64,000 bases of DNA, taken from NCBI RefSeq assembly GCF_003918875.1, contig NW_025767297.1:558001-622000 (forward strand), read 5' to 3'. The position numbers were made by a program, and so were the translations under genes. The notes under the pieces are model-generated. The model searched no databases and had not been told where the DNA came from. It saw nothing but the letters and a program-made list of their open reading frames with translations. This document shows positions 7,291-61,865 of this stretch, piece by piece. Numbering within the stretch: position 1 is the stretch's first letter; each line of letters begins with the position of its first letter. This DNA is from Haliotis rubra (lineage: Eukaryota).

Positions 7291-8575
7291 ATTAAAGTGA
7301 ACATCAATTGTGAAATGAACAGTAATCTTCGTCGGATTTTATTTTCTGTTGTTGTTTAAATACTTTCTATGGAAATAGTGGTTATTGCCGTTACCCCATG
7401 TCATGGTACGTTTACCTTCTTCGACGTTACTTATTGATAGTGTAGAATTCTGCAGCGTTCTTCATCAACTCGATTGACTTCATCATGGGCAATAAAGACA
7501 ACTTACTTCACATTAGGAATTACTAATTATTTGTCCCCCATGAATAAATGGGGTATGCGTCTCGCAAAGTATCATGAAGCGATGCATTATTTGACACGGA
7601 AGATATAATCCTTTCTTAAGCACTATCGTTATTGTCTGAACGTTACCATGGTGATTGGTTTATGGATTCCATAACAAACCCAGAAAGCATCCAACAGTCA
7701 TCATATGATAGTATCTCCATCTTCAGGTCATTACTGGAATCGTTTCAAGGACGCCTAATAGGGGTAAATACCACGTATTAGAACGTCACAACATCTCTTA
7801 TTAACGTTACAAGTCACCTACAATCGCATAGTTTCGTGAATAATTGAATCTATCGTTTATAATTGAATCCAATAGGGCATTAAATGAAGCAACAATTGAC
7901 TACATCCGTAAACAACAAGATTTATGGCCATGGTTCCTTTGATCGATGCTCAGTATATAAACGGTGCTTTGTGAATAAGACAATTGGTTTGAAACTGGTA
8001 GCAGTCTATCCCGTTGTGAGATGCGTGAATGGTTTCCACCAGTCTGACAGGAGCGTGGTTTATTCGCCTGTAACAAGCGGAGGCTTTGAAAAGCGATCTC
8101 GTTTTGGTTATCGATTCGTTTACATAGATCCTTCTCTATAAACATTCGAAAAGATTTCTGATAGTGTGTGACTTTTCAGAGGTCAAGAAGCGGTCAAACG
8201 TGGCTTGTTTACTTGCCAGCTATGGCAGCGGGTTCTTTCTTTATGTATTTCTGATTCAAAACGTTGTGCAGTCCTGAAGAATGGTGGTCGAATACTTACA
8301 TGTTTATACATGGTTATTGCCCATCTGTGCGGTATGTGCATAGGAGTGTTTAACATAAGAAGTACACCCTTTACTGCAATAGGGTGGTGATTATATTATT
8401 TACATTTAAGAAATGTTTACGTCCAGTGGCAGCAAATGTCTTTGACATTTGCATTGATGTATGATACATTGATGGGCGTCCAATTTATAGATCTGTACAA
8501 ACAGTTTTAAATGTACACGTGGCTGCATGCTGGTCAACGTAGGTTCAGGGAGTTATATTACATGGATGTAGGATA

Positions 8576-9546
8576 TTATCTTACCTTCACGTAAAATACT
8601 TTAATTTCATTGGTCAATGACGCTTTAACAAATTTCCGTGTCACCCCTCCCAGGAGGGTAACAACTGGAAAAAATATTATCCCACAGTAACAGCGAAACT
8701 CTCCGCCGAGAAGCTGTGTAACAATCGTATGACGTCATAATATGACGCATGCAGTGCCCGGAGATCGAAAACCGTTCGATGAGCTGTTTTTTAGTTCACT
8801 ATGTACACATTTATTTTATTAAATTATTTTATACATTGAATCGTTTGCACACTCAATTTAAACATAATTAACAATTTTTAAAGCAGTTTTAAGCTTGTCA
8901 GAATATGTTTCAATGATTTTAAAAATCCAGTCGAGAGATAGATGCCATTTTGTTTACATGTCATATAGTCGGTAACGATCTTCAAAATAAGATATAATGA
9001 TATTTTGTACATTTATTATGGCGGCAAGATCTCCCCCGAGTGTCTTTTGAAATCAAATATATCACCACGAGTTGATAAAGTAACAAATATCCGTGGCTTG
9101 CCGAGGATATTTTTATTTTTATCAACGAGTGTTGATATATTTGATATCAGAAGACACGAGGGTGAGATTCTATTTATCATCAAAAATCACTCTTCATTAG
9201 TTTTCAATGAAAAATGTACATCTCTGAACACAGTACTGCCATTAGATTTGCAGTGCAGTGATGTCATAGCATTGTGACGTCATCAAGTTCATGACGTCAT
9301 AGCATTGTCAGGGCATTGTGCAAAATCTACTGTTCAAACGATATCTCGTCTGATCTCACACAAGCGATATCTCCCGTGGAACACAGTTTTGGATGAGAAA
9401 TACGTTGTATGCTTCTCCCTCGGGTAATACGGTCTGATGAACGCCTTTTTGTGTCAGTGTTACCCCTCGCCTACCGGCTCGGATGACACTGCTACAAAGA
9501 GGCGTACATCAGACCGTATTACCCTCCAGAGAAGCATACAACTTAT
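8576..9546 (+). mobile_element. Non-autonomous long-hairpin element with a nested related element (class unresolved; Crypton- or Helentron-like)
   Basis: Starts TTATCTTACC; long hairpins at 9029-9168 and 9404-9542; architecture shared with 61073-61442. Confidence 0.6.
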
Positions 9547-9689
9547 ACACTAGTATGCAAGGGGACGATGAAGGATATGTACTATGATGAAATCGATGAA
9601 AGATATGTAGTATGATGACATCAATGTAGGATAATCAGTTTTGACTGAAAACAGTATCTTATGTGATTCAGTGCAAAGACAAGATCCTG

Positions 9690-29229: not shown

Positions 29230-31395
29230 AATGATGAATCATACATGATTATGTTGAGCAGCAAATGTAATAATGAGTTAGATATGGTTGTGTTCAGCAG
29301 CACTTGTTATGTTAAGTCCGATATGGTTGTGTTCAGCAGCACTTGTTATGTTAAGTCCGATATGGTTGTGCTAAGCAGCACTTGTTATGTTAAGTCCGAT
29401 ATGGTTGTGCTAAGCAGCACTTGTTATGTTAAGTCCGATATGGTTGTGCTAAGTAGCACTTAAGCACTAATCTCGTGTCAGATATGATTTAATAAATGTG
29501 CTAAGCAGCACTTGGAAATGTTGTTAAGTAATATTAGGTTGCAATGATAAGCAGCACATGTTAAAGTCACATATAATGATGTTAAGAAGCACATGTCATG
29601 TGGGTCCGATATATAGGTTGTGTTAAGCAGCACTTATGTGTTAAGTAGCACGATATGATATTGTGTTGTTGTTATGTTAAGTCCGATAGATATTATGTTG
29701 AGCAGCACATGTAATGTTGTGTCATAGATATTATGTTGAGTAGCACATGCAATGTTGTGTCATGATATTATGTTAAGCACCGATAGCACATGTAATGTTG
29801 TGTCATAGATATTATGTTGTAGCAACATGCAATGTTGTATCATAGATATTATGTAAGCAGCACTTGTTATGTTAAGTCCGATAAATATTGTGTTAAGTAG
29901 CACATGTAATGTTAAGTGTCATAGATATTATGCTAGTAGCACATGCAATGTTGTGTCATAGATATTATGTTAAGTAGCACATGTTGTGGAGTCATGATAT
30001 TAATGTTGTGTCATAGATATTATGTTAAGTAGCACATGTAATGTTGTGTCATAGATATTATGTTGAGTAGCACATGCAATGTTGTAGTCATAGATATTAT
30101 GTTAAGTAGCACATGTAATGTTGTGTCATAGATATTATGTTGAGTAGCACATGCAATGTTGTGTCATAGATATTATGTTGAGTAGCACATGTAATGTTGT
30201 GTCATAGATATTATGTGAGTAGCACATGTAATGTTGTGTCATAGATATTATGTTAAGTAGCACATGCAATGTTGTGTCATAGATATTATGTTGAGTAGCA
30301 CATGTAATGTTGTGTCATAGATATTATGTTGAGTAGCACATGTAATGTTGTGTCATAGATATTATGTTGAGTAGCACATGTAATGTTGTGTCATAGATAT
30401 TATGTTGTTGTAGCACATGTATTGTGTTGAGTAGCATATGTAATGTTGTGTCATAGATATTATGTAAGTAGCACATGTAATGTTGTGTCATAGATATTAT
30501 GTTGAGTAGCACATGTAATGTTGTGTCATAGATATTATGTTGAGTAGCACATGTAAATGTAATATAATTGTTGAGTACGCCACATCAGCAAATCCCAGTT
30601 ATGTCATGGCGGCGGTATGTTAAATAGCACATGTAATGTTGTGTCATAGATATTATGTTAGCAAGTAAGTTGTGTCATAGATAATGTTGAACATGTCATA
30701 GATATTATGTGAGTAGCACATGTAATGTTGTGTCATAGATATTATGTTGAGTAGCACATGCAATGTTGTGTCATAGATATTATGTTAAGTAGCACATGCA
30801 ATGTTGTGTCATAGTATTATGTTAAGTAGCACATACAATGTTGTGTCATAGATATTATGTTAAGTAGCACATGTAATGTTGTGTCATAGATATTATGTTA
30901 AGTAGCACATGTAATGTTGTGTCATAGATATTATGTTGAGTAGCACATGTAATGTTGTGTCATAGATATTATGTTAAGTAGCACATGTAATGTTGTGTCA
31001 TAGATATTGTGTTTAGTAGCACATGTAATGTTGTAACATACATATTATGTTGAGTGACACATGTTGTGTCATAATATAATTGTGAGTGAGTCAGTGAGTT
31101 TAGTTTTACGCCACACTCAGCAATATCCCAGCTATATGGCGGCGGTCTGTAAATAATCGAGTCTGGACCAGACAATCCAGTGATCAACAGCATGAGCATG
31201 TTATTATGTTGAATAGCACATGTAATGTTGTGTCATAGATATTATGTTGTCGTTATGTTGTAAAATAATATGTATGTCACAACATTATATATGTAATGTG
31301 CTACTTAGCATAATATGTATGACACAACATTACATGTGCTACTCAACATAATATGTATGACACAACATTACATGTGCTACTCAACATAATGCGTA
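29230..31395. repeat. 39/38-bp minisatellite array with a terminal inverted block
   Basis: 39-bp GATATGGTTGTGTTCAGCAGCACTTGTTATGTTAAGTCC grades into 38-bp ATAGATATTATGTTGAGTAGCACATGTAATGTTGTGTC; units reverse-complemented after ~31265. Confidence 0.92.
31082..31200 (-). mobile_element. SINE family B 3' half inserted in the minisatellite
   Basis: Tail and body match family B. Confidence 0.85.
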
Positions 31396-32779
31396 TGCTT
31401 GTGTTGAGAGGAGAGCCTCAGCTGATGCAGTCCATACACTTGTTCAATAAGATGCTCTAAATATATGCGACGGAACCCTTTCCATGGTATGTCTCAGATT
31501 GCCCAAACGAAATTATTTTTCCTTCCGGCAAGCCCTTTCTGCAACGCAAAGCCCCTAAATCAAGCAATTCACGATTCTCCACAGGTTCTAAACACCCTGG
31601 GAATCACATGGGCTACTTTTCAGTTTGAGAGGAGTTAGTTGTTTCTATCCAAAATGTTTTTTTTCATAGACTTAGTGTGCGTTTACAACCCTGACACAAC
31701 CTCTGAATCATCAATAGTGTATCCTGTCAAATGTTAAAAACCATAAAACGGTGTGGTGTCAATATTACCAGTTTATTGTTACTCCAGCTAGAATATATAA
31801 CATTGCTCAATATCATCCGAGACAGGAGCCATTTCTTCAGCTCAATTTATCTTATTTTGATTCAGCACATGTATTCAAAAAACAGTAAAACATGTACAAA
31901 CACATACAAACGGCATGAAGGGTCGTAGCCATCCCCCTTATGCCATGACAAGCGATATCATGTACATAGACGACTGTAGTGCCTTGTAATCTGTACTTGG
32001 TATCAGACAAGCATTATTATCACAGCAGGAATCACAACTATCTGGGGAGTTCACCCCTTTTAACATGGTGCTGTGCCGCCTTTTGGCGAGAACGATAAGT
32101 GAAGGCAATTTCCCAGAAAGATAAAGAAGGTTCTGAATTTGGCAGATAGGCTTCTCTGTAGGAGCTGTTCACGACTATGTATTGTGTTACTGTAATCAGT
32201 GATTATGAGAAATAAGATACAGTCTGTGTTTGCACGTCTACGAGATAGTAAATATACCTTGACGCTTGAGGCGATTTCCGCAGGATTTAATAAGCGGCAG
32301 TGAGATGAAATGAGGTTTAACGTTGTGTTCCACTTTCAAAAGATTTCCCCTCTTATGTAGCCATTTGCGTGAAGCGTTGTGTGTGGCTGCCTGTGCTAGT
32401 CCTGACTAGTACATGTGTACTGAGGGCCAGTCAGAGTAAAACCAATCATTATCGCATTAGGTTAACCAATAGGGAGGAACAGTTTTTTATGGATAAACAA
32501 ATTCTTTGTTGCAATAGATGCGACGTTTCGGTGTAGATCCTTTATTGACTTATTGTGTTTACGTACATTCTAGATGTCACTTAAAGAAATTACCAAAGGG
32601 CCCAGGCACAAGAATAACCTTTGTGCTAAACTAAATTATACCCAAATATACATACAATATAAATACCAAATTAAATTATTGTTAAAATACATCGATAGTT
32701 CGACATTAATTACATGTACTTTGGTCATCATGAATCCAGACAGCATAGATTTTGTCAGACAGAAAGCGCGGTTAACGTT

Positions 32780-55200: not shown

Positions 55201-57680
55201 AAACATGCTTCAGATACCTTTCAGGACAGACGCTGGAGGTACCCTTGCATTCCCTGTCCTCTTTTGGCCCATTCTGATTACACGTACTTAGCAAAAACAA
55301 GCAACATTATCCAACACTGGAGACAAGCCAGGAAAGTGTAACCGATCACGGATTTTCTGAAGATAACATTTTGTAGTTAGTGCATATATCTTTAACCAAT
55401 GGTCATTCTGATACTGATGTTAAATTGGAATATAGCTATATGTACCCAAATACACATGATACCATGTGTTTGTGGTGGAAGCTATATCTACCAATTTACA
55501 CATGATACCAATTGTGTGTGGCGGAAGCTATATATGTACCCATTTACACGTGATGGCATGTGCCGCATGTCCAATTATTCATATCAGATGTGTATTTTTC
55601 ATGAATTGAACCAAGAGTAAAATATGCAATCAGGCTGTCAAGGCCATGCAACTTGCAAACGATAGTGTTGAGTGATATGCTTGCTTCACTTAGTGGGGAC
55701 AGGAACAAACAGTCTCAAGTGCCAGACTTCCTGTAGAAATCTCTCGAATAGTTTCCGCTGTTCAAACTCCTACTTTCGGTGAAGTTATCGGCTTGATTGC
55801 CTCATTAACGTGATGTTGTCTCGTGACAGGTAATGAAACCTCCCATACTGCAGCATGTGTCAACACTTCCACAGTCAAGTGAACTTGGCATTATGTGTCA
55901 ATAGTTTCATAGAAACATGTAGTGCAGCACGTACCAACACCTTCTTCGTGGCATGACACTTTCTTAGTCTGCAAGTATCAACATAGTATGACACTGATGA
56001 CTTGCAGCACGTTTTAACAGGTTCATAGTCACGTGCCAACATCTTCATCCACACGTGTCAAGAAGCACGTGTCAACAGTTTCTTATTCTACACTTGTCAA
56101 CAGTTTCATAATCACGACATGCAGCACCCGTCAAGACGTCATGAGACACCTGACATGCAGAACGACCCAACAATTCCATAATCACATGACATGCAGCACG
56201 TGTCCACATCTTCTTCTACAAATGCCGTGAAGCACATGTCAACATTGTCGTCGTCTCGTGACCAGTAGAACATGTCCACAGTTTCTCAGTCACATGACTT
56301 GTAACATTCATCAACAGGTGTTCATTTCAGCATTAATTGGGTATCTACTAAGGACATAATTCAAACAGGACAAATGGTTCACCATATTATTTCATATTTT
56401 GCAGGACGTAACCCTTATAATAACCATGCTGACTTTGTAATTTCTTTGAGTGGTTTTTCTGAAGTTGGGAAGTTCGACACTGACACATTTATGGATAACA
56501 ACTTCATTCATTTTGTGAGTGCGACGCTTCCTTCCAGATTCTTGTACTGCTGTCTTGTCATGTATGCACTCAGCAATTCTTATCCATAAATGTGTCAGTA
56601 GTGTTGACCTTCCTCCAGTAATTCAGATGAAAACACGTGTTAACGTGTCAACTTTTAACAGAATGCTCCAATGCTCTTTTTCTCTGAGAGTTTATTCCCG
56701 ATCTGAAGACACATGTGTCCCATCTCACGCTTTTTACAAAGAATTCATTCTATGATGTGTTCATGTTACTCATCATTTGACTAAGTTGAACGATGACAAC
56801 GACGACGACGCCGATGAAGATGATGATGATGAGTAGGAGGATGAGGAGTGTTAAAATGATTGCTTTCCCATGCTCCATACAACCATATCTTTTTCGATAA
56901 TGAGACTTTGCATGTTTACACTTCCAGCTCAAGGAATATTGCCTGATGATTGAGGCTGTATTTATGCTGTGTAACCTTAATAGAAAAGATGAATTTCATC
57001 CACGGTGATGAAGTACTTTTAACCAACTGTGACTGCATCTTTAATCCCCAAATAGTTTCATATTGCATCCTCACAAATGCCACTTTTGAAATTAGCTTTT
57101 GCCAGATCAAACATACGAAAATAGTACGTGTATTTTTCGTCTTAAATGCGTGTTTCATATTTTCTGGCAAGGGAAATGAATCAAATCGACAGGACGTCCG
57201 TCAAAACATGATCGTGAAAAACAAAGTTGGAATGTCACCATATTATGACCACGTGGAACTAATTTTGATCAAATTAAAGTGATATAACCAATTGATAAAT
57301 GGATTCTTCAATCCAACTTGTACGTTTGGGCTCTCCAGTAACCCCTCTCTAATACCTCCAAAAATAAAAGGTAATCCTGCTCAAGTGTAAAGTTCTTTGG
57401 AAGCTCTGAAACCCTGCATTATTCAGAGATCCATTTGGATTTTGGTGGGGGATATACATAACAGATAATATTTGAGACTAAGTGTTAGTCAAGTGATCTA
57501 TTATTAAAGAGGATGGGCCACAACACATTGTAAGATCTGGGTAGGAATCGGATACTTGCAAGTCAAGGTGCTGGTTATGTCATGAACTGCACAAATGCTA
57601 AATCTCTTGGAATCAGGTCTTAGGCGTGACCAGAGAAGGCGTTAGTCTCAAGGCTACTCCACCGCCCCTTTTCTATAAAG

Positions 57681-59247: not shown

Positions 59248-61072
59248 AACATACATACATACATAAATGCAGTTTTCACGATACTTTAAATCTATCACAG
59301 ACTATGTAACGCCACTTTATTTACCATTATTTCTGTATATTATTTGCATGTCCCAATCCATCTATCAATCCAATCCAAACGAAACACAGAAACCAATCTA
59401 TGTCATTTACAAAGTATCCTATTTAAATCGGACTGGATATCAATCTTGTCATCTGTTTGTCTGCCTATTTATTACAAACGTCCAGATGAACAGTGATTTA
59501 TTTCTGGTATTGATACTTAAACTAATCCCGGAGGTATTTCAGACAACATTACAATTGTAGATGTTGCCATTTTCACTATTATCTAGATCACTGTCTAGAC
59601 AGGAAACAATAGAACCACTACTTGGACAAATAAACCTACATATATACAAAACAACATTTGGTAGCAATAGCCCACTCCATATAAACAGTTCAAATAGCGT
59701 TACCGGGCAAAAGAAACATTTTGCTTGAAAATTGGATTCAACCAGAACATTACAAACGTTATTTAAATGCTATAAACGTGTAAGACAGCGCCAAAACACT
59801 GCAAACTGCCCTTAACACAACTATTATACCTAATTGAAATACATCGATAACATTCTCTTGTTGAGTTCATATTTAGCAACTATAAAAAGTGAGTGTACAC
59901 TGTGTTTGTCCGGCAGGTTATAGCTAGATATTTTACCAAAAAACTTTACCAAAATTTACAGAACTTCAAAAACAGCGTATGGACACAATACTATTGTAAG
60001 TGAAGGTCACATCCGTTTCCCATGTCGCAACTGTCAGTTAGGTTTTTCACACATTTGTTTCTTTGTGTTGACTGTGTTGACGAAATGGGTAATTACGTCA
60101 CCTACATGATGACGTTTACCAACGTCGTTCAAATAATATTGACACTGCCATCCACTGCTGGAGATACAAACTGCTGTTAATCCACATACAATGCAGCTGT
60201 ATTATATACGTTGACGTAGCACTCGGGCTCAGGTGATAAAAAATGAAAATAAGAAACACATATACCTGAGTTGCGTTACAAAAACAAAGAAATACCCAGC
60301 AGATTGAATTTATGCGTATGTCAGTGTCAGGTCACTTTAAAGTTTTCGTCACAAATTACGTTTTATGATCGAATTTGATCCGTTTCTTTCTCCCGATATG
60401 CCTTATGGATGGCATACAGACTCTATGCGTTGCCGTTTCAAAAACGTGTCTTATCTTCTTCGATCATGAATGTCTTGCGCTGACTGATTTTATCCTGTCA
60501 AAGGTCTAAGTCTTCATATTATATAGAGTTTCAGAATTCCTCTTTTGATGTTTAGATACGATGAATATGTCTTGTGAAAAGGTCACTACGGAGTAGTTTG
60601 CCTAGCTGACTTGGATGACTGTATCCACACGGCTGCTGGTGTCAATCGGATTGTCTGGTCCAAACCCGTTTGTTTACAGACAGATGTCAACTAGCTGGAG
60701 TACTGCCAGGTAAAACTAAGAACCCAAAATGAAATCTGTCGTGATGTGATTAATGTTTAAGACAGTATGCTTTAAAAGCTGTATCTGTGTGTTCCGGACA
60801 GTCTGTCTGTATGTATGGTGATGGCTAGAATACCACCGTTAAACAAAACTACATTCTGATTAGACGTAATTAGCGAAAACAAAGCAACACTATTCAACAC
60901 TGGAGACAAGCCAGGGAAGTGCAACAGATCACGGATTTCCTGATGATAACATTACTTTGTAGTTAGTGCATATATTTATTTAACCAAAGTCATTCTGATA
61001 GTGGCGGTACATAGGAATAAACCTATGTACCCAGTTCCACATGATGCCATATGTTTGTGGTGAAGCTTTATA

Positions 61073-61442
61073 ATAAGTTGTTTCCTGGTCACTAGGGGAC
61101 ATGGGTTGATGTACCCTCTATGTTTGGGAGGGCGAGGGGAACATAAACAAAACATCTAGGGTACATCAACCCATGGGCCCCGAGGGGCCAGTGAACAACG
61201 TATTTATCTTACCGAACACCTCAATGTTAATTTTGAACTGTTTAAAGCACGCGTATTGGATCATAATGAGGAGTACCGGAGTTAGGCAACAGCCCAAACA
61301 CTACTAACACGAAGTAGCAAACGAATTCTCACAGTTCGGCATTTCCAGCGGGTAACAGAGAAAATGTTACTCGCTTGTAAGCGGGGTACATTGATTGGCT
61401 TCAGCCAATCAGAAAAAGACATGTATGTGTGAGGTAAGATAA
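61073..61442 (-). mobile_element. Long-hairpin non-autonomous element inserted in the 45-bp minisatellite
   Basis: Hairpin 61077-61199; inverted repeat TTATCTTACC (61204-61213) / GGTAAGATAA (61433-61442); absent from duplication copy 1. Confidence 0.7.
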
Positions 61443-61865
61443 GATGCCATATGTTTGTGGTGAAGCTACATGTACCTATTTACACACGATGTCATCTGTT
61501 TGTGGTGAAGTTATATGTACATATTTACCAAGATGCCATGCGCCTTTTGTGAAGCTATATGTACCCATTTACACACGATGTCATCTGTTTGTGGTGAAGT
61601 TATATGTACATATTTACACATGATGCCATGCGCCTGTTGTGAAACTATATGTACCCATTTACACACGATGCCATGTGTTTGTGGTGAAACTATATGTACC
61701 CATTTACACACGATGCCATGTGTTTTTGGTGAAGCTATATGTACCCATTTACACACGATGCCATGTGTTTTTGGTGAAGCTATATTTACCCATTTACACA
61801 CGATGCCATGTGTTTTTGGTGAAGCTATATGTAAAGTGGAACTTATATGTACCCATTTACACACT
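61443..61865. repeat. 45-bp minisatellite (ATGCCATGTGTTTGTGGTGAAGCTATATGTACCCATTTACACACG)n
   Basis: About 9 units. Confidence 0.92.

What the first reader, a model, noticed from the sequence alone, without database searches (positions are those of the whole stretch)
8576..9546. Long-hairpin elements share a hairpin-base motif, and one appears nested in the other's inverted repeat
Seen: this element starts TTATCTTACC and ends AAATACGTTG-[~140-nt hairpin]-CAACTTAT. The element at 61073-61442 (minus strand) has the same layout, TTATCTTACC...GGTAAGATAAATACGTTG-[hairpin]-CAACTTAT, but its stem sequence is unrelated. Here the expected GGTAAGAT|AAATACG is split: GGCAAGAT at 9023-9030 and AAATACG at 9398-9404. 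Between them lies an opposite-orientation module with its own hairpin (9029-9168) and inverted repeat (TATTTATCATC 9171 / GATGAGAAATA ~9400). No TSD is evident. Inference: conserved junctions with free stem sequence, plus insertion into a sibling's inverted repeat, suggest site-specific mobilisation by a tyrosine recombinase (Crypton-like) or an HUH/Helentron-like enzyme that recognises the hairpin base.
Basis: partly seen in the sequence, partly recalled or inferred. Interest (0 to 1): 0.72.

Follow-up and report, generated by a model that had tools for sequence, protein, structure and literature searches.

The report
Nested abalone Helentron-type hairpin transposons
These are copies of three very abundant, non-coding rolling-circle (Helentron/Helitron2-type) jumping elements of an abalone-like genome, one landed inside another; the kind is known, but their 140-base end hairpins with a conserved mismatch are unusual.

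Summary
Window 8576-9547 (+) is a copy of repeat family A. It is interrupted between GGCAAGAT and AAATACG by a minus-strand copy of family B (9029-9401; 367 extra bases, 9031-9397). Window 61070-61442 (-) is a copy of family C, a sister of A.

All three families are high-copy and non-coding, and none makes a target-site duplication. Their layout is that of Helitron-like element 2 (Helentron/Helitron2, non-autonomous form HINE). The 5' end forms a 10-15 nt inverted repeat with a stretch just upstream of a 3' palindrome, and the element ends right after that palindrome.

The genome also encodes an intact 2350-aa Helentron protein (OTU, DUF6570, Rep, PIF1, endonuclease). Its own ends differ, so no autonomous partner of A, B or C was found.

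New points:
- The palindromes are 130-150 nt, against 5-20 bp in described HINEs.
- A, B and C share a tandem T.C/C.T mismatch, with both arms reading CTCG.
- The flanks of B resemble its own joined ends, (A)T | NTATC.
- The host site, read on the minus strand (CGTAT|TTATC), fits that preference exactly.

The nesting is a single event in the genome, not a hot spot. Nothing supports a tyrosine recombinase. Earlier notes of this scan describe similar giant-hairpin families elsewhere in this genome.

The parts
8576..9547 (+). Family A element (host), a non-autonomous Helentron-type element. Uninterrupted copies are about 600-625 bp; this copy is interrupted by B.
   Evidence: The repeat boundaries at 8576 and 9547 are also seen as loose ends of hundreds of contigs in 4 runs. 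This copy is 89-95% identical to the family consensus.
8576..8585 (+). 5' terminal inverted repeat of A, TTATCTTACC.
   Evidence: It is the reverse complement of GGTAAGATAA, which lies upstream of the palindrome in uninterrupted copies.
9023..9030 (+). Left piece of A's split 3' sub-terminal inverted repeat (GGCAAGAT; the family has GGTAAGAT).
   Evidence: Contigs join 9030 to 9398.
9398..9546 (+). Right piece of the sub-terminal repeat (AA) followed by A's 3' palindrome. The arms are 9400-9465 and 9481-9546, with base ATAC GTTGT...ACAAC TTAT. The left arm reads CTCG at 9419-9422. The right arm of this copy reads CTCC at 9524-9527, where the family has CTCG.
   Evidence: (-53.3 kcal/mol, z -16).
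9029..9401 (-). Family B element, nested in the opposite orientation. Full copies are 390 bp. The bases strictly extra to A are 9031-9397. This copy is 94% identical to the B consensus and lacks the last 7 nt (TCTCTAT).
9029..9168 (-). 3' palindrome of B (arms 9029-9097 and 9100-9168).
9169..9186 (-). 3' sub-terminal inverted repeat of B. The minus strand reads TTTTTGATGATAAATAG; the family consensus is TTTTGGATGATAAATAG.
9387..9401 (-). 5' terminal inverted repeat of B. The minus strand reads ATTTCTCATCCAAAA; the family has (T)TTATCATCCAAAA.
61070..61442 (-). Family C element, a sister family of A with the same terminal and sub-terminal repeat and the same hairpin base, about 375 bp.
   Evidence: This copy is 92% identical to the C consensus.
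61433..61442 (-). 5' terminal inverted repeat of C, TTATCTTACC.
61204..61213 (-). 3' sub-terminal inverted repeat of C, GGTAAGATAA.
61073..61203 (-). 3' palindrome of C with base ATACGTTGT...ACAACTTAT.

Best explanation
Families A, B and C are non-autonomous rolling-circle transposons of the Helitron-like element 2 group (Helentron/Helitron2; the non-autonomous form is called HINE).

Layout (shown). Each element begins (T)TTATC.... This 5' end forms a 10-15 nt inverted repeat with a stretch ending ...GATAA. That stretch lies directly upstream of a 130-150 nt palindrome whose base is ATA...TAT. The element ends 0-3 nt after the palindrome.

Mobilisation (inferred). I propose that a Helentron Rep/helicase, an HUH enzyme with two catalytic tyrosines, moves them in trans. 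It would nick at the conserved 5' TTATC and at the 3' ...TAT end. The palindrome would act as the stop and recognition signal in single-stranded DNA. Integration makes no target duplication, and the preferred sites look like the element's own joined ends, (A)T | NTAT(C).

Why the nesting site fits (geometry shown, its use inferred). The 5' repeat mirrors the sub-terminal repeat, and the 3' end mirrors the left base of the palindrome. So the boundary between sub-terminal repeat and palindrome, read on the other strand, copies the joined-end sequence: CAACGTAT|TTATCTTACC inside A against CAACTTAT(A)|TTATCTTACC for A's joined ends.

The event in this window (order inferred). B inserted once, in opposite orientation, at this look-alike site of an older A copy. 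About 11 nt around B's 3' junction were later lost.

The conserved mismatch (role speculative). A tandem T.C/C.T mismatch is conserved, with CTCG on both arms. On the complementary strand it would be G.A/A.G. It is probably a protein-recognition or strand-marking feature.
For: Layout and copy number.

Palindromes. The consensus palindromes are near-perfect, at -71.7, -62.0 and -50.1 kcal/mol. A and C keep a 14-bp lower stem although 5 of its positions differ on both arms, and their upper stems are unrelated in sequence yet fully paired.

No target duplication.

Empty site. One B copy has a clean paralogous empty site, TGTT^TT, with nothing gained or lost (L008).

Flank preference of B.
- Position -1 is T in about 92 of 100 listed places, and position -2 is A in about 52.
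- Position +2 is T in 93 of 100 and +3 is A in about 76 of 100, followed by T or C. These counts were made by eye.
- Computed on 18 fetched copies: T 17/18 at -1, T 18/18 at +2, A 12/18 at +3, T 15/18 at +4, C 11/18 at +5.

Published definition of the group: 12-16 nt terminal inverted repeats, a stem-loop after the right repeat, insertion at T-T, no duplication (PMC11417382; PMC4067079; PMC7492417).

Enzyme in the genome. There are 29 Helitron_like_N hits. One open frame of 2350 aa carries OTU-like, DUF6570, Rep, PIF1 and Exo_endo_phos domains. It has an HUH motif (HTH), YIISYISK and GPGGTGKS.

Relative age. B is younger: its copies are 98% identical to their consensus, against 90% for A.
Against: - No autonomous element with TTATC... 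ends was found. The one Helentron I could read has different ends with short hairpins.
- The strict T^T rule is only partly met. Position +1 after B is T in only about 29%.
- The palindromes are about ten times longer than in described HINEs.
- Exact ends rest on one paralogous empty site of 86% identity.
- The window's B copy lacks its 3' tail, so its original insertion point is inferred, not read.
- Resemblance of the target to the joined ends would also fit a site-specific recombinase.
Confidence: 0.8

Rival explanations
1. The elements are moved by a tyrosine recombinase (Crypton-like). A circular form would recombine with a target through a short shared core.
For: B's flanks resemble its joined ends, as expected when a core sequence is shared between a circle junction and its target. 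There is no target duplication.
Against: The layout of asymmetric inverted repeat plus terminal palindrome is the published hallmark of Helitron-like element 2, not of Cryptons. No recombinase gene is linked to these ends. The genome does hold intact Helentron genes.
Confidence: 0.04
2. They are ordinary cut-and-paste MITEs with terminal inverted repeats, moved by a DDE transposase. The nesting position is then random.
For: They are short, non-coding, high-copy and have inverted repeats. A true TA-duplicating palindromic MITE does sit at the same spot in another A copy. Nesting of B in A is a single event.
Against: No target duplication in 36 copies, and none at the clean empty site. The right-hand repeat lies 130-150 nt inside the element, not at its end. 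The ends TTATC.../...TAT are not inverted copies of each other.
Confidence: 0.05
3. The B-in-A arrangement did not arise by transposition into A. It arose by recombination or template switching between the similar end sequences: B's 5' end is TTTATCATCC, and A's sub-terminal repeat read on the minus strand is TTTATCTTACC.
For: Both junctions overlap by 2-3 shared bases (TTT and AT). B's 3' tail of 7 nt is missing. The arrangement is unique in the genome.
Against: B is otherwise complete (373 of 390 nt) and A is complete on both sides, with no host base lost (joint 9030 to 9398). The 5' junction is exactly what a normal insertion at AT^TTATC gives. A small deletion between two AT dinucleotides explains the 3' junction.
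Confidence: 0.1

Closest known systems
HINEs / DINE-1 (non-autonomous Helentrons of mites, Drosophila and mosquitoes; Thomas et al. 2014, PMC4067079)
   Same: Sub-terminal inverted repeats of about 12-15 nt. A palindrome after the right repeat, near the 3' end. No target duplication. T-rich targets. Non-coding and very high copy. Families are defined by the sub-terminal repeat and subfamilies by the 3' end; by that rule A and C are one family with two subfamilies.
   Different: The palindrome is 130-150 nt (arms 65-70 nt) instead of 5-22 bp, and it reaches to within 0-3 nt of the 3' end. A tandem T.C/C.T mismatch module is conserved. No core sequence or central microsatellite is present. No partner was identified. 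Position +1 of the target is not consistently T.
Cg_HINE elements of the Pacific oyster (PMC7492417)
   Same: Mollusc host. Sub-terminal repeats of 11-12 nt followed by a palindrome in the right flank. TT or oligo-T targets. No duplication.
   Different: The oyster elements carry central satellite-like arrays and short palindromes. A, B and C carry no array, although copies A and C in this window lie next to short tandem arrays.
Helitron2 / FoHeli elements with asymmetric terminal inverted repeats (PMC5148889)
   Same: Asymmetric inverted repeat with the 3' arm inside the element. A sequence-specific target (TNAT|A or T in Fusarium). Evidence there for joined ends, that is, a circular intermediate.
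   Different: Fungal elements with short hairpins and different end sequences. They are autonomous and lack the endonuclease.
IS200/IS605 and IS91 families (bacterial HUH transposons); comparison from general knowledge, not tested here
   Same: Hairpins at or near the ends serve as recognition signals in single-stranded DNA. There is no duplication. Insertion is next to a short sequence that resembles the cleavage site at an element end.
   Different: These are prokaryotic, use one-tyrosine or unrelated Rep enzymes, and have much shorter hairpins. The resemblance is in logic only; membership is not claimed.

Membership tests
Helitron-like element 2 (Helentron/Helitron2), non-autonomous form (HINE) | Short (about 11-16 nt) inverted repeat between the 5' end and a stretch inside the 3' region | tested here: met
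   In A and C, TTATCTTACC pairs with GGTAAGATAA (10-11 nt). In B, TTTATCATCCAAAA pairs with TTTTGGATGATAAA (14 nt)..
Helitron-like element 2 (Helentron/Helitron2), non-autonomous form (HINE) | Palindrome or stem-loop after the right repeat, close to the 3' end | tested here: met
   It is present in all three families but is 130-150 nt long, against 5-22 bp in published families.
Helitron-like element 2 (Helentron/Helitron2), non-autonomous form (HINE) | No target-site duplication | tested here: met
   In 36 copies, the longest flank-to-flank repeat is 0-1 nt in 32, 2 nt in 3 and 3 nt in 1. The clean paralogous empty site in L008 shows no gain.
Helitron-like element 2 (Helentron/Helitron2), non-autonomous form (HINE) | Insertion between T and T | tested here: inconclusive
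   Position -1 is T in 92-94% of B copies. One empty site reads TGTT^TT. However, position +1 is T in only about 29%. Shifting the boundary by one base moves the T to the other side.
Helitron-like element 2 (Helentron/Helitron2), non-autonomous form (HINE) | An autonomous partner with the same ends that encodes Rep-helicase (with or without endonuclease) | tested here: inconclusive
   The genome has 29 Rep hits and one intact 2350-aa Helentron frame. That element has other ends. Other Rep loci could not be fetched.
Canonical Helitron (Helitron-like element 1) | 5' TC, 3' CTRR after a short hairpin, insertion between A and T | tested here: not met
   The ends are TTATC... and ...TAT(A). Inverted repeats are present.
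Cut-and-paste MITE with terminal inverted repeats | Inverted repeats at both extreme ends, flanked by a target duplication of fixed length | tested here: not met
   In contrast, the unrelated 133-bp palindromic repeat in L030 does meet it (TA duplication).
Crypton (tyrosine-recombinase transposon) | Encodes or depends on a tyrosine recombinase; lacks inverted repeats | not tested
   No recombinase search was run. The elements do have inverted repeats and a palindrome, which Cryptons are not described as having (general knowledge).

The most novel reading that the evidence does not exclude
The giant end palindrome, with its conserved strand-asymmetric tandem mismatches, may be a device that lets the Helentron Rep tell the transposed strand from its complement. 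The mismatches are T.C/C.T on the element strand and would be G.A/A.G on the other strand. Integration may use the same sequence-specific cleavage as resolution of the joined ends. On that reading a eukaryotic Helentron chooses targets that copy its circle junction, as bacterial IS200/IS605 and IS91 elements do, and every element carries an internal mirror image of that junction which can attract relatives.
Probability: 0.2. Interest if true: 0.6.

Novelty: new variant of a known kind. Interest (0 to 1): 0.35.

Why it matters
Helentron-type elements are widespread, but how their ends work is poorly understood. No transposition of a Helentron has been reconstituted in the papers I could read.

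These abalone families offer three sister designs. All keep the same end bases, the same geometry and the same mismatch module, while the rest of the stem is free. That pattern indicates which features the enzyme reads.

The elements also matter for annotation. They are thousands of long palindromes that break assemblies, decay by arm deletions and look like microRNA precursors. They also explain a class of apparent nested hairpin structures.

The finding itself is an ordinary member of mollusc repeat content, and other follow-ups of this scan have already met similar families.

Tried and rejected
(1) Partner search.
- The best Rep hit (C2101) is an intact Helentron.
- Its 20 kb holds no TTATC.T.CC or GATAAATA motif and no long palindrome.
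- Its 3' region has short hairpins, AGGTCTTCCAGAC...GTCTGAAGACCT, and arrays of 1-2 kb modules. It is therefore not the partner.
- None of the listed places of A's hairpin start or B's 3' end lies near a listed Rep hit. Only the first 100 places of each list are visible.

(2) Recurrent nesting. A search for B's 5' end next to A's hairpin base found only the window.

(3) Second insertion at the same A site (L030). This looked like support for a hot spot. It proved to be a separate 133-bp palindromic repeat with a TA duplication, shown by the empty paralogue at C64:187766.

(4) Public reads. Contigs of four runs confirm the repeat boundaries and the uninterrupted A junction. They are too fragmented at repeats to show the orthologous locus with or without B. 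Contigs of runs X1 and X11 do cross A's outer boundaries at this locus.

(5) Other long palindromes in the window. The only one, at 31217-31293, is the inversion point of a 45-bp satellite and is unrelated.

(6) Rfam. Only weak microRNA-like hits, far below the gathering scores. No meaningful open frames.

(7) Other empty-site candidates. The L010 candidate and the satellite around C are not clean: they show 8 extra and 15 missing nt respectively.

(8) Literature. No held paper describes abalone Helentrons.

Full report
**What is there**

The window is part of a 1.38-Gb eukaryotic assembly.

The three palindromes fold far better as single-stranded DNA than shuffled controls: z = -16, -11 and -8, with 0 of 200 shuffles as good.

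**Three repeat families**

Whole-genome searches show three discrete families.
- Family A is the host, 8576-9030 plus 9398-9547. Uninterrupted copies are about 600-625 bp, and the first look gave 1348 candidates.
- Family B is nested on the minus strand at 9029-9401. Full copies are 390 bp, with 4238 candidates. Its exact 3' end occurs 991 times and its exact 5' end 955 times, against 2 and 0 for reversed-pattern controls.
- Family C is at 61070-61442 on the minus strand. Copies are about 375 bp, with 2474 candidates.

Fetched copies are on average 90% (A), 98% (B) and 93% (C) identical to their majority consensus. The window copies are 89-95%, 94% and 92% identical. None holds a meaningful open frame, and none matches an Rfam family at its gathering score.

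**The split junction**

Uninterrupted A copies read ...ATGGCGGTAAGATAAATACGTTGTATGC.... Of the 100 listed places (214 in all) with the start of A's hairpin, 96 or more have this junction.

Contigs of four public runs join window 9030 directly to 9398. So the window copy carries 367 extra bases, with no host base lost or duplicated.

The inserted copy is not complete. Family B ends ...GGGTGAGATTCTCTAT, whereas the window has ...GGGGGAGAT followed at once by host CTTGCC.

The 5' junction, CAACGTAT|TT(C)TCATCC, is what a normal insertion at CGTAT^TTATC gives. At the 3' junction about 11 nt are missing: B's TCTCTAT plus host TTAT. They lie between two AT dinucleotides. I read this as insertion followed by a small deletion. 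An aberrant joining event cannot be excluded.

**Anatomy**

Majority consensus sequences give the following.
- A: TTATCTTACC ... GGTAAGATAA-ATAC-GTTGTATGCTTCTCC-CTCG-[upper stem]-CTCG-AGAGAAGCATACAAC-TTAT(A).
- C has the same ends and base, with a different lower-stem interior and an unrelated upper stem.
- B: (T)TTATCATCCAAAA ... TTTTGGATGATAA-ATA-GAATCTCACC-CTCG-...-CTCG-GGTGAGATTC-TC-TAT.

The consensus palindromes are almost perfect: -71.7, -62.0 and -50.1 kcal/mol.

A and C are 78% identical over the sub-terminal repeat plus the start of the stem, and 74% identical over the end of the stem. Five lower-stem positions differ on both arms while pairing is kept.

In all three families both arms read CTCG at the same height, 11-14 bp above the base. 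This gives a tandem T.C/C.T mismatch between C-G pairs. A and B repeat the module at the apex: CCCTCGCC...GGCTCGGG in A, and CCTCGG-N4-CCTCGG in B. On the complementary strand the same places would be tandem G.A mismatches.

**Ends and targets**

No family shows a target duplication.

For B:
- The base before TTATC is T in about 92 of 100 listed places, and the one before that is A in about half.
- After TCTCTAT come a variable base, then T (93 of 100), A (about 76 of 100) and T or C. These counts were made by eye.
- Computed on 18 fetched copies: T 17/18 at -1, T 18/18 at +2, A 12/18 at +3, T 15/18 at +4, C 11/18 at +5.

A and C show the same pattern one base later...TTATA-N-T-R-T.

One B copy (L008) has a paralogous uninterrupted site nearby, 86% identical. 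Joining the flanks of an element defined as TTATC...TCTCTAT reproduces TGTTTT(A/G)TTCACG exactly, so that insertion lies inside a run of T with nothing gained or lost.

The flanks thus resemble B's own joined ends...TAT|TTATC. I reached it and tested it on B only.

**Classification**

Published definitions of Helitron-like element 2 (Helentron, Helitron2 and their non-autonomous HINE or DINE-1 forms) require:
- short terminal inverted repeats;
- a stem-loop after the right repeat at the 3' end;
- insertion at T-T without duplication;
- ends shared with an autonomous Rep-helicase(-endonuclease) element (PMC11417382; PMC5148889; PMC4067079; PMC7492417).

The first two features and the lack of duplication are met. 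The T-T rule is only partly met.

The enzyme class is present. There are 29 Helitron_like_N hits. One 2350-aa open frame at C2101 carries OTU-like, DUF6570, Helitron_like_N, PIF1 and Exo_endo_phos domains. It has RGSPHTHCLFW, YIISYISK and GPGGTGKS motifs.

That element has different ends. The partner of A, B and C is therefore unidentified.

By the naming rule of Thomas et al., A and C are two subfamilies of one family, and B is a second family.

**Why B sits where it does**

The 5' repeat mirrors the sub-terminal repeat, and the 3' end mirrors the left base of the palindrome. So the boundary between sub-terminal repeat and palindrome, read on the other strand, is a near copy of the element's joined ends. 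Inside A it reads GCATACAACGTAT|TTATCTTACC. The joined ends read GCATACAACTTAT(A)|TTATCTTACC.

This inner site, AT^TTATC, matches B's target preference at every informative position. That explains the position and the opposite orientation without invoking special targeting of siblings.

It is not a hot spot:
- B next to A's hairpin base occurs only once in the genome at one mismatch or fewer.
- Only 2-4 of 100 listed A junctions are disturbed.
- The other insertion I found at this spot (L030) is an unrelated 133-bp palindromic repeat with a TA duplication, proven by an empty paralogue.

**Mechanism: shown and inferred**

Shown: the anatomy; the copy numbers; the lack of duplication; the flank preference; stems that covary between families; the presence of intact Helentron genes.

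Inferred from what is known of HUH Rep enzymes and Helitrons: nicking at TTATC and at TAT; the palindrome as a terminator in single-stranded DNA; a joined-end intermediate; use of the same specificity at the target.

Speculative: the role of the CTCG mismatch.

**Novelty**

The kind is known. The size of the palindrome, the conserved mismatch module and the target that mimics the joined ends are not described in the papers I could search. Other follow-ups of this scan have reported comparable giant-hairpin families in the same genome.

Noticed in passing
L061 + L062 (G000:C2101:2296000-2315999), open frame at C2101:2302741-2309790, minus strand: Apparently intact Helentron gene of 2350 aa. It carries OTU-like protease, DUF6570, Rep (HTH, YIISYISK), PIF1 helicase (GPGGTGKS) and AP-endonuclease domains. 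More than 4 kb of repeated sequence lies on each side, including arrays of 1-2 kb modules. End-like units read TTCGGGTAAAAACAGTAGGTCTTCCAGACTTTCGTCTGAAGACCTAA.
   Followed up: partly
L030:1966-2098 (G000:C64:292901-293033): A separate 133-bp palindromic repeat (TACTCATGCCAATAATAGTTGTCACCC...) with about 1880 candidate copies at 92-95% identity. Here it is inserted in A's GATATATACG with a TA duplication. The empty paralogue is at C64:187766. It looks like a Tc1/mariner-type MITE.
   Followed up: partly
window 61443-61833, and 61043-61072: A 45-bp satellite (8.7 units) abuts the 5' end of element C. A further part-unit follows C's 3' end, so that 25 nt (AGCTTCACCACAAACATATGGCATC) flank C on both sides. 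Compared with the array, about 15 nt of a unit are missing at the insertion point. A related array lies near 55421-55562.
   Followed up: partly
window 9566-9633 and 8557-8575: A 28-bp tandem repeat (2.4 units) lies 20 nt after A's 3' end. Its last part (ATGACATCAATGTAGGATA) resembles the 19 nt just before A's 5' end (ATTACATGGATGTAGGATA). Element A seems to sit in a short tandem array, as C does.
   Followed up: no
L029 and L040; L031 (family A copies): In L029 and L040 (one duplicated locus) the apex of A's palindrome is inverted relative to the family. In L031 the right-arm CTCG is replaced by CGAG, which closes the mismatch. About half of the 19 A copies have partial deletions of a hairpin arm. 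All of this fits unstable long palindromes.
   Followed up: no
window 8729-8739, 9275-9299; consensus of A and B: Both A and B carry copies of the palindromic octamer TGACGTCA (a CRE-like site) in their internal parts. This is the only internal similarity between A and B (86% over 21 nt).
   Followed up: no
window 30700-31400: A 45-bp satellite array changes orientation at 31217-31293, which creates a 32-nt inverted repeat. It is unrelated to the hairpin elements.
   Followed up: partly
G000:C7:315407-315439 and L013: A B copy starts directly after the 3' end of a C-type element (...GAACAACTTATAAT|TTATCATCC). L013 holds a head-to-tail pair of B copies (TCTCTAT|TTATCATCC). Both fit insertion next to end-like sequences.
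   Followed up: no
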